This document shows positions 37,201-44,200 of a stretch of 64,000 bases of DNA, one piece after another. This stretch comes from Bispira polyomma (Eukaryota). The notes under the pieces were generated by a model that ran no database searches, was not told the DNA's origin, and saw only the letters and a program-made list of their open reading frames with translations. The DNA is taken from NCBI GenBank assembly GCA_965649765.1, contig OZ287751.1:77190001-77254000 (forward strand), written 5' to 3'. The translations under genes and the position numbers were made by a program. How positions within the stretch are numbered: position 1 is the first letter of the stretch; every line of letters begins with the position of its first letter.

Positions 37201-39515
37201 TTAGACTCCAATCTGGATGAATATAGAAGATGAATGTATTTGAGCCTGTTTTTTGTACCATTACACATAAAGTAATGTGTAACTGCCAGGCTTGAGGATA
37301 GTCAAGCTTCCCAAAGCCCAATACTATCATTTAGTATTACGGTGGAAGCAATTGGGATAGGTTTCTTGTTTTATTATTTACAGTAACAAAAACTGTTTAT
37401 AATACAAGCAGTTAGTATTTATATAAGGGCGCAAGTCCTGTATAGAGGTGACTGGTAATAAAGCCACGTGGAAAACCAGACCAAATCAATCACCATGTAA
37501 ACCAGAAGCATTTGGTGAAGAATACAGCAACCTTGTAACTAAAATAGGCTTCAATTCTGCTGTCTAACAAGAACCTAACTGAGTAGAAAATTTCCTGCAT
37601 ACAGAATCGATGGAATATAACCAAACAAAGGTTTTAAAGGCAACATACCATAGCGATGACCCAGGTTTTCAAAAATTTACCAAGAAGCATGGAATAAAAA
37701 AGCTTTGTCCAATTAGAGCTGATATCAGCTGGTTAACAATGACTGGTTTAAACACAAATATACTTTTATTGTACAATAAGCGATTGCTTCCTACAGTCTT
37801 TGACTTGGTTATATATCTAGTGTATAAACAAGAGAATCCTGGTAATTTGATTTGTTTATAACTCAGTATTGTGAACACTTAGTCACTTAATGGATATCCG
37901 AGGTCACATGAACAGGCTTATTTAGAATACAAATCTTAAAATGTTCTTGGTCTCATTCAATCACAATCCTTAAAACAATATTTTCAGCAAAATAAAATTG
38001 GCTCAGATATAAATTTATAATTCACAATCTTTGAGAATATCACTCCTGGTCTGACACTTTAAGGCTGGTGAAACATAATAACATCTTTTCTTGTCTTGAC
38101 TTTGGTTCAGTTGGGGTTTCAGCACGTCATATCATGACGATCAGTTCCCTGTGGACGAAATCCGAGGAGCAGGGTAGCTTTCTTGTGGTGAAAGGAATAC
38201 CACTATATTGACTGTAATCTACCTAATCTCACCTCCCAAGACAGGGTTTCAGTGAAAGAATAGCTCTTCTCATTGACGGGGTAATGACTTGACTCTGTCA
38301 TACACAGTTATAAATGGACAGTGTCTGTGTCAGTTTCACTTCATCAAACGCACCTTTTAGCATTTGAAAACTGAATTCTCACGGTTTATGGAAGTTATAA
38401 TTATGGCTACAGTAACAAACAACCATATTAAAAGTAGTTAGCAAAATATAAGATAAAATATTCTCAACAACAGATCGTATAATTAGGATATGGTCTCCAT
38501 ATCTCTGTATCATATCATTGGGGGTTTAGTGTTAACCCTTATGTTTAGTGTTTATAAATCTTCTACAACAAATGTATTCATACACCAAAATCTAACATGG
38601 CCTTGTCATGTCAAGTGACGTCTAGAATCGTTCCAGGGTTAATGAATTTTTGTAGTAAAAATCACAGTGATTTGGAGGTCAATGTTAAGAGTCTACATTT
38701 TCACGAAAGTTATGGAGGAGTTCAACAGGTAAAATAAGAAGGTTGTCACTTGTAATAGTTATAACTGCTTTTACTACCCACTTGCTACCCTGGGACAGCT
38801 TGATGTAACTGGAGATCAGTAACATTATTAGAGGAAGCCATATGATAGCTCCCTTGAGATATGATGTACTCAGTAGTCTGTTATAGTGCAAAGGTAATAG
38901 GTTTACAAGGAAGAAACCATGTTTAAATGAAAAGAAAAAGGTGAAGCAGTGCTCCCTGGGAAGTCATGTACAAACCCAAAGTCAGAATTCATGGACGCTT
39001 CAGTCCGGAAAATATGAATCAACTTTGAAAGAATAGAATTGTAGGCATGGTATGCTGATTGTATGCTGATGAGTTATTGTTTTCAGAAACATGGGAACAT
39101 AGATAAATGGTGATCCTCAAGCCTCTGTCTTCAGGTAGGTATATAGGACAGATGCTGGTGATGGACGGCTACACTTGGTCAGCCATAAACAGATAATTGA
39201 GTGGTTAGAATACCAGATGCATGTAGATTCTGTGTTGAGTATAAATATCAAAATGAATGGCAGAAAGTACACAACTCATTCTATGTATTTTTTCTTTACA
39301 TATTATCGCCCATATACATGCATTAGTAATTTTTTTTAAAACATCAAATTCTAAAAATTTTATTGTAATTTATCTTTTTGGAAGACAAATACTTACCTTA
39401 TCCTCACTAATGCTTTTATTTGGTTACCCTAAATATTCAACCATAAAAATCACATAAGTCTTTTTTTCTAAGACTATTCTTGTGATTTGACTTAAATTAT
39501 TCTCACCAACCTCAC

Positions 39516-39533
39516 TGCGCATGCGCCGGAAGT
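39516..39533. promoter_or_regulatory. Adjacent NRF1-like (TGCGCATGCGC) and ETS-like (CCGGAAGT) motifs in the ITR, mirrored at ~42984-43001
   Basis: Sequence tgcgcatgcgccggaagt. Motif match only. Confidence 0.4.
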
Positions 39534-41250: not shown

Positions 41251-44200
41251 ATGTCTCAATACAAGTACTAAAAGTACTAAACATGTAGAGCATGAAAAAA
41301 ACCTGATCAATAAGCAATCCATTACCCACTTAATAGATAAGGTACTGTACTCTAGTTGTCATGTAAAAAAATAGTCATCCAGACGGCATCATCTCTCCAA
41401 CTAAAAACTCTTCACCTTTATACCTCACAAAAAGAGGACAGACAAATGAGAGAAACAAAACAGCTCATCAGCATATGACTGTATGTTTGAAGATATAATG
41501 ATCCCTGTGAACTCTGTCAGATCTATCTGAATAATATGGTCCAGGTCTGGCAGGACACCAAAAAATAACTCCAGCAAATGAAGCATCCAGAACCGTTTAA
41601 TGCCCCTATGTTAAGATTATAGACTTGTATGATTATCGACATTCAATTTAAATCAAAATGCATCTCCTCGAGATATTGTGAAATTGATTCCAAAGAATTC
41701 ATTCATTTTGGATTCCCACATATAAAATACTGCATTCCTTGAACTAAACATGACCCCTTATTAAGGACATGAAAGAATTCAGTTGTGATCTGAACTACAA
41801 CCTACTTGTATACTGTTCAATCACACAAAATCCTGTTTTAAAAAGAAGTGACAGTCCAGAAATTTGATTTAATATGTGACATCAATTTCTGAACTTTTAT
41901 TAGCAACAGCCAGTCCATGGACATAAAAAATATAATCCAATTTGTGGGCGACTTCACATTCGGATGAATCACAAAAAAAAATACATGAAAATCGGCGCCA
42001 ATCACCACCCATGTAGGCTGTAGATTACAATCTTCTGAGTAATTCAGTACTTGTATCTTGTAAAAACATTCTGAATCTGAATTGACAAGTCTAAATCTGG
42101 GAGTCGGAATATATGATTTAGAACTTTTCCCAAGAATTTGATGATTAAAAAATGAAGATTAAATAAATCTCTGCAACTCCAAATTCATTAGGATATGAAA
42201 GTCGGCCCTTACGCCACCCATGCACCTAAGTGTGAATACTAATCCGGTTATCTCATTGTTCAAATAAATATCTGTAAGACATACTAAGAGCTTCTAGCGT
42301 TCACAATGAACTATAAGCAAATAATATATCACCCAAACGCTGTGGAGGCTTTTATCAAGCACACAGCTTTGAGTTTGTTGAGACATCACTGTTGAAACAT
42401 CACTGTAAGAGCATCACAGTTGGGACATCAGTGTTGCGACATCACTGGAATTCAAGCAAAAATCTGTATAAACAGGACCCATGTATGCTGTCCTATGACT
42501 TCTCAGCTACAGCAGATGTATTTCCTCCAATCTGTACATCTCAAGCATTCTCACTCTGCACAGTGGTAGTAGCACCCGACACATTTCCCGACTTAACTTT
42601 AGGAAGTCGATCCAAAATGGTGGTGACTTAATCTTAGCATCACTCTGTTTGGACACTGCTACAAACTCGCTAATGTTGTGGAGGCTTTTAACAAGCACAC
42701 AGACGAGTTTTTAAGATGACCCTCTGTGCTGTTCCAAAAATCGTCAAAAACGACAATGGACGCAAAAGATCGCAAACGAATATGTAAGGTCTGTTAAACT
42801 CCCAAAACGCTGCATCAGTTGCATTTTATTGCAGAAACCAAAGTTCCTCAGTCTTAATACTTGCTGACTTATAAATAAGTCATCTTGTCTTGAAAACTTC
42901 ACAGCAGTAGATTGAACTAGGTGTTGACACAATGGCGACCAAAATAATTGTGAAGGGTATCTCGAGGACGAGAGTTGAAGGGACTTCCGGCACATGCGCA
43001 GTGAGGTTGGTGAGAATAATTTAAGTCAAATCACAAGAATAGTCTTAGAAAAAAAGACTTATGTGATTTTTATGGTCGAATATTTAGGTGAACCAAATAA
43101 AAGCATTAGTGAGGATAAGGTATAGACTATTTATCGCAATAAAAAAACACCTCATCCCCTTTCAAACGGCCAGTTCTAAACATAAACAAACCTGCTCAAG
43201 AAACACATTTATGTTTGCCTATTGTTAGTAATAAAACACACTGGAACTAGGAGGAAAACCAATTTAAAAAAATAAGAGATGTTTAATAGAGACTCTCAAG
43301 GACAGAAAGGACTCTATTTGTGCTGGTAGCAACACAAACCCCATTAATGGAGGAAGTCTGTTTTCCCTTTTTGCTGTTTTAAAGAATTGAATTATTCTGC
43401 AGTTTACCACTCACTTTCATTCCAAACCCAAATTATCTCCTCTCCCAGTATAATGCTCACACGCAGATTAGCGTGTTGTAAGATTCTCTAGATAGGTACT
43501 CCATAAACAAATTGATTGTATTCTTCATTGTCCTATTTGTCTTCAATGGCCAAGGAACAATGCAATATTTTTGGAGCAGTCTGCTAATCTTAGAAGATTA
43601 TAAACTTTTTATAATGCATTGAAACTAAAATCTGTAAAGGTTTTAAGTAGAGACACTAAATCTACTGGGTTAAATTATATCACCCAAACAATATCTCAAC
43701 AACTATTGCTGCTAAGTGTGTTGTATACAGTTACATTCCTGCTAACCATTATAATTGGCGTTTGAGGGTGTCTTAGGTTTACCAAGATACCAAGTGGAAA
43801 AAGATGCAGATTTTATAGGTAATATGACCACAAGCTTGTCTATGATTTTGCTACCTGATTTAGTAGTTAATGTGCTTGCGCGACATTTAACACAAGAAAG
43901 TTTCAGAAAATTCAATTTAGAAACATGTAAAACAAAATCTTGAAATTGGCGAGTTAGAAATAGATGACAAAACAGAGTATTAAAGTTAATTGCTAAATTT
44001 TACCTTTGATCCCACTGGTCTGAGTAGCTAAGCTGTTCTCTCTTTAAAATCCATTAGATTTGCCATTTCAACTATTAAAATCTGCCACCCTTTTATGTGA
44101 TAGACACAGATCAAACAAGTGAGATCGTGGACTTTGTGACCTTCCAAGATAGATTTTAAAATAAATAAGAGAGCCCTCTCATTGATTGTGGAATTGACTA

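What the first reader, a model, noticed from the sequence alone, without database searches (positions are those of the whole stretch)
39350..43145. ORF-less DIRS1-type element with intact cis-replication architecture and an empty site in the same window
Seen: ~184-bp ITRs with only a handful of mismatches and different outer extensions. An ICR at 39626-39730 reads as the two element ends joined tail-to-head (...aaattacaataaaatttttacat|tttattgcgataaata...), i.e. a circle-junction template. The paralogous locus reads aacatcaaat|gaacacctca (52031-52050), which fixes the ends at A-tracts with no TSD. No gag, RT, RNase H or recombinase frame is recognisable. Established: ITR plus ICR and TSD-less insertion at TTT/AAA is the hallmark of DIRS1 retrotransposons, which integrate a circular intermediate using a tyrosine recombinase. 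The ICR lies near the 3' ITR, so the element is on the minus strand. Inference: this is a non-autonomous DIRS parasite, mobilised in trans after the segmental duplication, whose coding region was replaced by non-coding structured cargo.
Basis: partly seen in the sequence, partly recalled or inferred. Interest (0 to 1): 0.78.

Follow-up and report, generated by a model that had tools for sequence, protein, structure and literature searches.

The report
Gene-less DIRS-type retrotransposon copy
This is one old copy of a very abundant jumping element that keeps the end signals of DIRS-type retrotransposons, has lost its own genes, and most likely spread on enzymes from gene-bearing relatives in the same genome; it is a clean example of a known kind of genomic parasite.

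Summary
Window 39350-43144 is a 3,795-bp element on the minus strand. It has 184-nt inverted terminal repeats (97% complementary). An internal complementary region (ICR, 39626-39730) is the reverse complement of the two ends joined. A paralogous empty site at 52040|52041 shows insertion with no duplication or loss.

The reading is largely right.
- The gene-less interior recurs at 20 or more other loci.
- The 25-nt ICR junction core occurs 1,570 times in this 1.04-Gb genome.
- No sampled gene-less copy has an open frame above 132 aa.

Two points need correcting.
- The interior is not pure cargo. Probed with the lineage's own proteins, this copy keeps two short gag remnants. The 5.4-kb sister form also keeps collinear RT and recombinase scraps.
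- A gene-bearing relative exists (L054, C1:3429380-3435750). It carries gag, RT, RNase H and tyrosine-recombinase pieces, the same terminal sequences and a 94% identical ICR.

ICR variants private to single copies reappear in that copy's own right end, as ICR-templated end repair predicts.

Non-autonomous DIRS-order elements are already known (TOC1 of Chlamydomonas). This scan had already reported the same family elsewhere in this genome (s1-697631, s1-694604). It is a new member of a known kind, of modest interest.

The parts
39350..43144 (-). Whole non-autonomous DIRS1-type element, 3,795 bp, with its 5' end at 43144.
   Evidence: Ends fixed by about 30 copies and by the empty site.
39350..39393 (-). 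3' terminal extension outside the ITR (rE), 44 nt, complementary to the ICR. The first base triplet is TCT, against the family's TGT.
   Evidence: It is the most conserved part among copies, 95% mean pairwise identity.
39394..39577 (-). 3' inverted terminal repeat arm.
   Evidence: 184 nt, 97% complementary to 42939-43122.
39517..39533 (.). GCGCATGCGC plus CCGGAAGT motif inside the ITR, resembling NRF1 and ETS binding sites. It is mirrored in the other ITR near 42983-42999.
   Evidence: Read directly. Conserved across copies with CpG-decay variants. A promoter role is inferred only.
39626..39730 (-). Internal complementary region. 39626-39690 is complementary to the 3' end and 39687-39730 to the 5' end. 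Its reverse complement reads CGCAATAAAA|TGTAAAAATTTT.
   Evidence: The core occurs 1,570 times in the genome. Mean pairwise identity is 94%, against 87% for the ITR.
39731..40118 (-). Non-coding internal segment next to the ICR, shared by the gene-less family but not by the gene-bearing relative.
   Evidence: Homology to L054 stops about 30 nt past the ICR.
40119..41250 (-). Tandem array of units about 96 bp long (about 11 units), each with two short palindromes.
   Evidence: Folding z-scores are -0.6 to -3.6. The array is also present in the 5.4-kb form.
41251..42546 (-). Non-coding interior specific to the short subfamily. It includes a 14-bp x5 repeat at 42376-42447.
   Evidence: The segment at element positions 2232-2920 recurs at 20 or more loci, always next to the family's left part. 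No Pfam match on the longest frames.
42547..42627 (-). Remnant of the gag gene, 27 aa, 70% identical to gag residues 145-170 of L054.
   Evidence: tblastn E 3e-4; blastn 79% over 80 nt, E 5e-13.
42897..43007 (-). Remnant of the gag N-terminus (residues 5-43), overlapping the inner end of the 5' ITR.
   Evidence: tblastn E 0.025, with matching hits in L031e and L036e at E 0.001-0.002.
42939..43122 (-). 5' inverted terminal repeat arm.
43123..43144 (-). 5' terminal 22 nt outside the ITR, complementary to the ICR right arm.
52040..52041 (.). Paralogous empty target site, caaat|gaacacc.

Best explanation
The stretch is an old, probably no longer mobile copy of a gene-less family of DIRS1-type tyrosine-recombinase retrotransposons.

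Shown here:
- The element has the full cis set: ITRs, unequal terminal extensions, and an ICR that is the inverted copy of the joined ends.
- It inserted without a target-site duplication between AAAT and GAA, after a local duplication.
- It has no usable ORF and only scraps of gag.
- The same gene-less design is found at many loci with unrelated flanks.
- A gene-bearing relative (gag, RT, RNase H and tyrosine-recombinase pieces) carries the same ends and a near-identical ICR.

Inferred, following the Cappello model as tested in Dictyostelium (PMC7192593):
- The element is transcribed from the 5' ITR as a sub-genomic RNA.
- The RNA is copied into cDNA by RT supplied in trans by gene-bearing relatives.
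- The missing ends are rebuilt by annealing to the ICR.
- The molecule is closed at the junction AATAAAA|TGTAAAA, and the relatives' recombinase inserts it at A/T-rich sites (flank consensus AAT|element|A).
For: Architecture and ends. Exact empty site.

Family size:
- 233 matches from 4,150 first-look candidates with the whole element.
- 1,570 exact copies of the ICR core.
- 1,677 copies of the 22-nt ITR-end motif.

Gene-less state before spread:
- No open frame above 132 aa in 10 sampled non-autonomous copies.
- No Pfam match on the longest frames.
- The same short RT, recombinase and gag scraps lie at the same places in L031-L035.
- These copies have different flanks.

Gene-bearing relative L054:
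- RVT_1 at E 1.3e-20 and RT_RNaseH at E 6e-5.
- Three collinear recombinase pieces against a profile of the genome's own recombinases.
- The same ends and target; ICR 94% and left extension 98% identical to the window copy.

Constraint and templating:
- The ICR and extension are more conserved than the ITR and interior.
- A copy's own ICR mismatches its own right end at 0.8 positions on average, against 3.29 across copies; 2 of 10,000 permutations do as well.
- Variants private to L034, L053 and L054 are present in both ICR and end.

Literature: the ICR is essential and DIRS-1 RT acts in trans (PMC7192593). ICR and ITR sizes and the lack of TSD fit DIRS1-like elements (PMC3266345).
Against: - No RNA data could be found for this organism, so transcription and an RNA intermediate are not shown.
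- No circle junction can be told apart from the ICR in short contigs.
- The one gene-bearing relative in hand is itself broken. It has a frameshift in RT, a stop between RNase H and the recombinase part, and a foreign insertion in the recombinase. Its ITR core is only about 80% identical, so it is a relative and not the proven helper.
- Intact helpers are inferred only from open-frame lengths and coordinates.
- Part of the ICR-to-end covariation follows subfamily relatedness.
- Some copies multiplied by segmental duplication (L027, L029 and L032 share flanks).
Confidence: 0.85

Rival explanations
1. A single autonomous DIRS copy that decayed in place, not a member of a non-autonomous family.
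For: Short gag remnants are present. The copy is old, at most 92% identical to its nearest relative.
Against: The same gene-less interior, breakpoints and tandem array occur at 20 or more loci with different flanks. The sister 5.4-kb form carries identical scraps at identical positions in independent insertions.
Confidence: 0.03
2. The family spreads as DNA. The recombinase would excise and reinsert circles, as in Crypton elements, or copies would multiply by segmental duplication. On this view the ICR is only an internal recombination site, and the empty site could reflect precise excision from the paralog.
For: - The ICR is a double-stranded inverted copy of the junction, so it could act as a recombinase site.
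- ICR hits on C1 are clustered. Fourteen of 99 neighbouring intervals are 15 kb or less, against about 3 expected, and 13 of the 14 are in the same orientation.
- Some copies share flanks.
- No RNA evidence was obtained.
Against: - Copy number in the thousands with unrelated flanks fits replicative spread.
- Variants private to a copy's ICR are copied into its own end. This fits templated end synthesis better than plain cut-and-paste.
- The relatives encode RT and RNase H.
- The ICR is experimentally required after cDNA synthesis in DIRS-1 (PMC7192593).
Confidence: 0.08
3. The gene-less family is mobilised by the abundant Ngaro-type (split direct repeat) elements of this genome, not by ITR/ICR-type relatives.
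For: Ngaro-type elements with intact RT and recombinase are common here. Earlier scan notes describe junction hairpins in them.
Against: The ICR and junction show no similarity to sampled Ngaro loci beyond shuffled controls. Gene-bearing elements with the very same ends exist, which makes a foreign helper unnecessary.
Confidence: 0.04

Closest known systems
DIRS1-like retrotransposons (DIRS-1 of Dictyostelium; metazoan DIRS1-like elements surveyed in PMC3266345)
   Same: - ITRs with unequal outer extensions.
- A two-part ICR just inside the 3' ITR, complementary to both ends. The arms here are 44 and 65 nt, and the literature range is 36-65 nt.
- No target-site duplication.
- The element starts with TTT in its own orientation, and A/T trinucleotides sit at the junction.
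- The gene-bearing relative has gag, RT, RNase H and a tyrosine recombinase.
   Different: - This copy and its family encode no protein.
- The gene-bearing relative shows no Dam-type methyltransferase domain, which DIRS1-like elements normally carry.
- In that relative the RNase H part and the first recombinase pieces lie in one reading frame.
TOC1 of Chlamydomonas reinhardtii, an active non-autonomous DIRS-order retrotransposon (named as such in bioRxiv 10.1101/2022.06.16.496473)
   Same: A multi-kilobase DIRS-order element that is non-autonomous, not a short deletion derivative. That it depends on related coding elements rests on my own knowledge and was not checked here.
   Different: TOC1 belongs to the split-direct-repeat type (my own knowledge, not checked here). 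The present family has ITRs and an ICR and lives in a different host lineage.
The 5.4-5.5-kb gene-less DIRS family reported earlier by this scan in the same genome (s1-697631, s1-694604, s1-585878)
   Same: Same ends, the same ICR and the same tandem array. Positions 3-1587 of the window element match those copies at 82-84% identity.
   Different: The window copy belongs to a shorter subfamily (3.5-3.8 kb here and in L036). That subfamily lacks the RT scrap and carries its own 1.1-kb interior segment.

Membership tests
DIRS1-like (ITR/ICR type) retrotransposons | Inverted terminal repeats | tested here: met
   184 nt, 97% complementary.
DIRS1-like (ITR/ICR type) retrotransposons | ICR near the 3' ITR whose two halves are complementary to the two element ends and meet at a junction | tested here: met
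   39626-39730. The position relative to the genes was checked in L054.
DIRS1-like (ITR/ICR type) retrotransposons | Insertion without target-site duplication | tested here: met
   Exact empty site at 52040|52041. No repeated flank in about 30 copies.
DIRS1-like (ITR/ICR type) retrotransposons | Terminal NTT trinucleotides matching a 3-bp circular junction | tested here: inconclusive
   - The element begins with TTT in its own orientation, and the ICR junction reads AAAA|TGT.
- The flank after the 3' end is mostly ATT (AAT on the window strand).
- The base next to TG differs from the ICR (T, C or A against A), so a shared 3-bp core is not evident.
DIRS1-like (ITR/ICR type) retrotransposons | Encodes gag, RT, RNase H and a tyrosine recombinase | tested here: not met
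   - Not met by this copy or its family, so it is a non-autonomous derivative.
- Met by the relative L054 for gag, RT and RNase H.
- For the recombinase in L054 there are three collinear weak profile matches.
- PF00589 and PF12012 did not hit it.
DIRS1-like (ITR/ICR type) retrotransposons | Dam-like methyltransferase domain in pol | tested here: not met
   PF05869 found nothing in the whole genome, with 1 first-look candidate and no match. It also found nothing in the L054 pol. The first-look filter may miss divergent domains.
Non-autonomous retrotransposon family | Many independent insertions share the same gene-less interior, and a coding relative shares the cis ends | tested here: met
Non-autonomous retrotransposon family | Mobilisation in trans through an RNA intermediate | not testable with these tools
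   No RNA runs were found for this organism, and only DNA contigs could be laid.
Ngaro / PAT-like (split direct repeat) elements | Split direct repeats A1...B1-A2-B2 | tested here: not met
   No such direct repeats in 38500-44000. They are present in the genome's other recombinase elements L050 and L051.

The most novel reading that the evidence does not exclude
This genome may host a large ITR/ICR-type DIRS lineage that lacks the Dam-type methyltransferase thought to define DIRS1-like elements. In the one relative in hand, RNase H and the start of the recombinase lie in one frame. Its gene-less offshoot has at least 1,570 copies. That offshoot also offers natural genetic evidence, in what looks like an animal genome, that element ends are rebuilt from the ICR: variants private to one copy's ICR reappear in that copy's own end.
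Probability: 0.35. Interest if true: 0.5.

Novelty: new member of a known kind. Interest (0 to 1): 0.3.

Why it matters
The family is a clean natural deletion experiment for DIRS-type retrotransposition. It suggests what may suffice in cis for copying: about 230 bp at each end plus a 105-nt ICR. The protein genes appear dispensable in cis.

The ICR-to-end covariation supports the end-repair model outside Dictyostelium.

For annotation, the family probably accounts for several megabases of this genome that protein-based transposon finders would leave unclassified.

None of this overturns current understanding. Non-autonomous DIRS-order elements and trans action of DIRS RT are already documented.

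Tried and rejected
- Genome's own Ngaro-type proteins as probes. tblastn with their gag, RT and recombinase against the gene-less copies gave nothing below E 0.2. This first suggested no coding remnant. The lineage's own proteins from L054 later overturned that.
- PF00589 scan of the genome. It gave only split-direct-repeat elements without similarity to these ends.
- A 17-nt end-like motif in the L051 family. It is at chance level and lies inside a repeat, not at an end.
- PF05869 (Dam): no hit in the genome.
- PF12012 (DUF3504). The protein atlas suggested it for the recombinase N-terminal piece. It hit 18 places, none at the positions of this lineage's recombinase-region frames listed.
- The 315-aa frame overlapping pol in L054. 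It is low-complexity and not recombinase-like, so it was rejected as a gene.
- Reads. Only DNA contigs were available and no RNA. Circle junctions cannot be separated from the ICR in such contigs.
- Fetching more sequence.
- The organism could not be named, because the run records are coded.
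Full report
**Observation**

Window 39350-43144 holds two 184-nt inverted arms, 39394-39577 and 42939-43122, that are 97% complementary (96.7% by blastn). Outside the arms lie unequal extensions of 44 nt on the left and 22 nt on the right.

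The stretch 39626-39730 is complementary to both ends. Its left part pairs with 39346-39410 (59 nt at 98%, 65 nt at 95%). Its right part pairs with 43101-43144 (44 nt at 95%). Read on the other strand it is the two ends joined: CGCAATAAAA|TGTAAAAATTTT.

About 30 copies from elsewhere in the genome fix the ends at TGTAAAAATTTT...CGCAATAAAA. The flank consensus is AAT before the element and A after it. The window copy starts TCT, a G-to-C change.

When 39350-43144 is removed, the flanks align with the paralogous stretch over 638 columns at 90.3% identity. The joint falls inside an ungapped block at 52040|52041, so insertion left neither a duplication nor a deletion.

No frame exceeds 106 aa stop to stop.

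**A family, not a one-off**

The genome (G000) has 1.035 Gb in 75 contigs, and the window is C4:77190001-77254000.

- The whole element finds 233 matches among 4,150 first-look candidates, of which only 40 were scored.
- The 25-nt ICR junction core occurs 1,570 times, and its reversed control 0 times.
- A 22-nt ITR-end motif occurs 1,677 times.

The window's own interior segment (element positions 2232-2920) recurs at 20 or more loci, always beside the family's left part. A commoner form of 5.4-5.6 kb shares positions 3-1587 at 82-84% identity, including the 96-bp array and the right end.

Ten sampled copies (L031-L036, L052, L053, L055 and the window copy) have no open frame above 132 aa. Their longest frames match no Pfam family at E 1. 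Flanks differ from copy to copy. L027, L029 and L032 share flanks, so some copies also arose by segmental duplication.

In contigs of public DNA runs the right junction is bridged in two samples at flank-like depth. No RNA run was found.

**A gene-bearing relative**

Element lengths were inferred from inverted pairs of the 22-mer on contig 1. Most are 4.8-5.9 kb and a few are longer.

One of the longer ones, L054 (C1:3429380-3435750), carries genes on its plus strand:
- a 426-aa gag-like frame;
- RT (RVT_1, E 1.3e-20);
- RNase H (E 6e-5).

A profile built from the genome's own recombinases matches three collinear pieces. These are the N-terminal domain at 3711-3956, an LCPVRAL motif at 4401-4484, and an H-x-x-(R/K) box at 5329-5430.

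L054 is broken. It has a frameshift within RT, a stop between 4199 and 4308, and an unrelated repeat inserted in the recombinase region.

Its ends are TGTAAAAATTTT...CGTAATAAAA, in an AAT|...|A target. Compared with the window copy, its ICR is 94% identical, its 64-nt terminal extension 98%, and its ITR core about 80%.

Its pol has 17,029 first-look candidates in the genome, with open frames up to about 1,000-1,270 aa. Hits to the first 86 residues of its 188-aa frame (4308-4871, which holds the middle recombinase piece) lie between inverted 22-mers at C1:38794795/38799961 and C1:18111778/18116928. Gene-bearing elements with these ends are therefore not rare.

No Dam-type methyltransferase was found in L054 or anywhere in the genome. 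A recent survey finds DIRS elements with that very domain model (bioRxiv 10.64898/2026.05.21.726589).

**The interior is a wreck, not pure cargo**

The genome's Ngaro-type proteins found nothing in the gene-less copies. L054's proteins do find remnants.

In the window copy:
- gag residues 145-170 match 42547-42627 (70% identity over 27 aa, E 3e-4);
- gag residues 5-43 match 42897-43007 (E 0.025);
- both lie on the minus strand.

In the 5.4-kb form, collinear and at the same positions in L031-L035:
- the gag N-terminus (E 0.001);
- a 47-aa RT piece (E 9e-7);
- the start of the 188-aa frame that holds the middle recombinase piece (E 5e-5).

Independent insertions share the same scraps and the same lack of frames. 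The progenitor had therefore lost its genes before it spread.

The 96-bp units each fold into two hairpins. Their z-scores against shuffles are -0.6 to -3.6, so 'structured cargo' is possible but not shown.

**Evidence on mechanism**

Among 26 copies the mean pairwise identity is as follows:

| Region | Mean pairwise identity |
|---|---|
| Terminal extension | 95% |
| ICR | 94% |
| ITR | 87% |
| Adjacent interior | 88-90% |

Ten copies have both an ICR and a right end in hand. In these the ICR right arm mismatches its own end at 0.8 positions on average, against 3.29 for other copies' ends. Only 2 of 10,000 permutations do as well. Subfamily structure explains part of this.

Some variants are nevertheless private to one copy and occur in both its ICR and its end: L034 (TTGTGA), L053 (CTCTCTAC) and L054 (TTACGA). 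This is what the Cappello model predicts if ends are rebuilt on the ICR.

In Dictyostelium the ICR is essential at a step after cDNA synthesis, and DIRS-1 RT acts in trans (PMC7192593).

The remaining steps are inferred: transcription from the 5' ITR, reverse transcription by helper RT, closure at the junction, and recombinase-mediated insertion.

**Comparison with what is known**

The cis design meets the structural definition of DIRS1-like elements in PMC3266345 and PMC8969392.

A shared 3-bp core between junction and target is not evident here. The base before TG is T, C or A in the flanks but A in the ICR.

Non-autonomous DIRS-order elements are known. TOC1 of Chlamydomonas is called an active non-autonomous DIRS retrotransposon. 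A phrase search of the held literature found no paper describing a non-autonomous ITR/ICR-type family, but that library is incomplete and Repbase could not be consulted.

This scan had already reported the 5.4-kb gene-less family elsewhere in this genome (s1-697631, s1-694604, s1-585878). One of those reports said that gene-bearing elements share the end motif. I confirmed that here independently with L054.

**Verdict**

It is a new member of a known kind and of modest interest.

The most novel reading still open is that the whole ITR/ICR lineage of this genome lacks the methyltransferase domain, and that the ICR-to-end covariation is usable evidence for templated end repair in an animal-like genome.

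Noticed in passing
G000 contig 1, first 100 ICR-core hits, e.g. C1:5623129/5628523/5635661 and C1:23424231/23429860: ICR hits are clustered. Fourteen of 99 neighbouring intervals are 15 kb or less, against about 3 expected for even spacing, and 13 of the 14 are in the same orientation. Some are spaced by about one element length (5.4-5.6 kb). This suggests head-to-tail arrays or insertion next to existing copies.
   Followed up: partly
window 39517-39533 and mirrored near 42983-42999: The ITR carries GCGCATGCGC followed by CCGGAAGT, which resemble NRF1 and ETS sites. The motif is conserved across gene-less copies with TG/CA variants typical of CpG decay. No match with up to 4 mismatches was found in the gene-bearing relative L054.
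   Followed up: partly
L054:2550-4871 and genome-wide: The gene-bearing ITR/ICR lineage shows no Dam-type methyltransferase domain. In L054 the RNase H part and the N-terminal and middle recombinase pieces lie in one frame. Pol relatives have open frames of about 1,000 aa. This is unusual for elements with DIRS1-type ends.
   Followed up: partly
L054:4565-5278: The recombinase region of L054 is interrupted by an unrelated repeat. Residues 84-188 of its 188-aa frame match well over 50 other loci, all with short broken frames.
   Followed up: no
reads laid on window 43147 -> 39626 (table 5c): Contigs in all three runs join the right end of the element, after 5 extra letters (AGCAC), to a sequence that begins like the ICR or ITR end. 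Summed depth is 275-884. Other family copies therefore have an end-to-end or nested arrangement. This is not a clean circle junction.
   Followed up: no
L052:909-2827: One 5.4-kb family copy (C13:32149800-32156800) carries a 1.9-kb insertion absent from sister copies. It holds the only frame above 130 aa seen in a gene-less copy (132 aa at 346-741, minus strand).
   Followed up: no
window 34001-48500 versus 51779-58446: The element sits in one arm of an old local duplication (80-90% identity). Tandem repeats of about 69 bp lie at 48339-48663.
   Followed up: partly
L049, L050, L051 (C1:60488000, C10:38227000, C7:12449000): Three apparently intact recombinase retrotransposons with RT and RNase H and no methyltransferase. 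L050 and L051 have split or tail direct repeats, while none was found in L049. The genome holds many such Ngaro-type elements, as earlier scan notes also say.
   Followed up: partly
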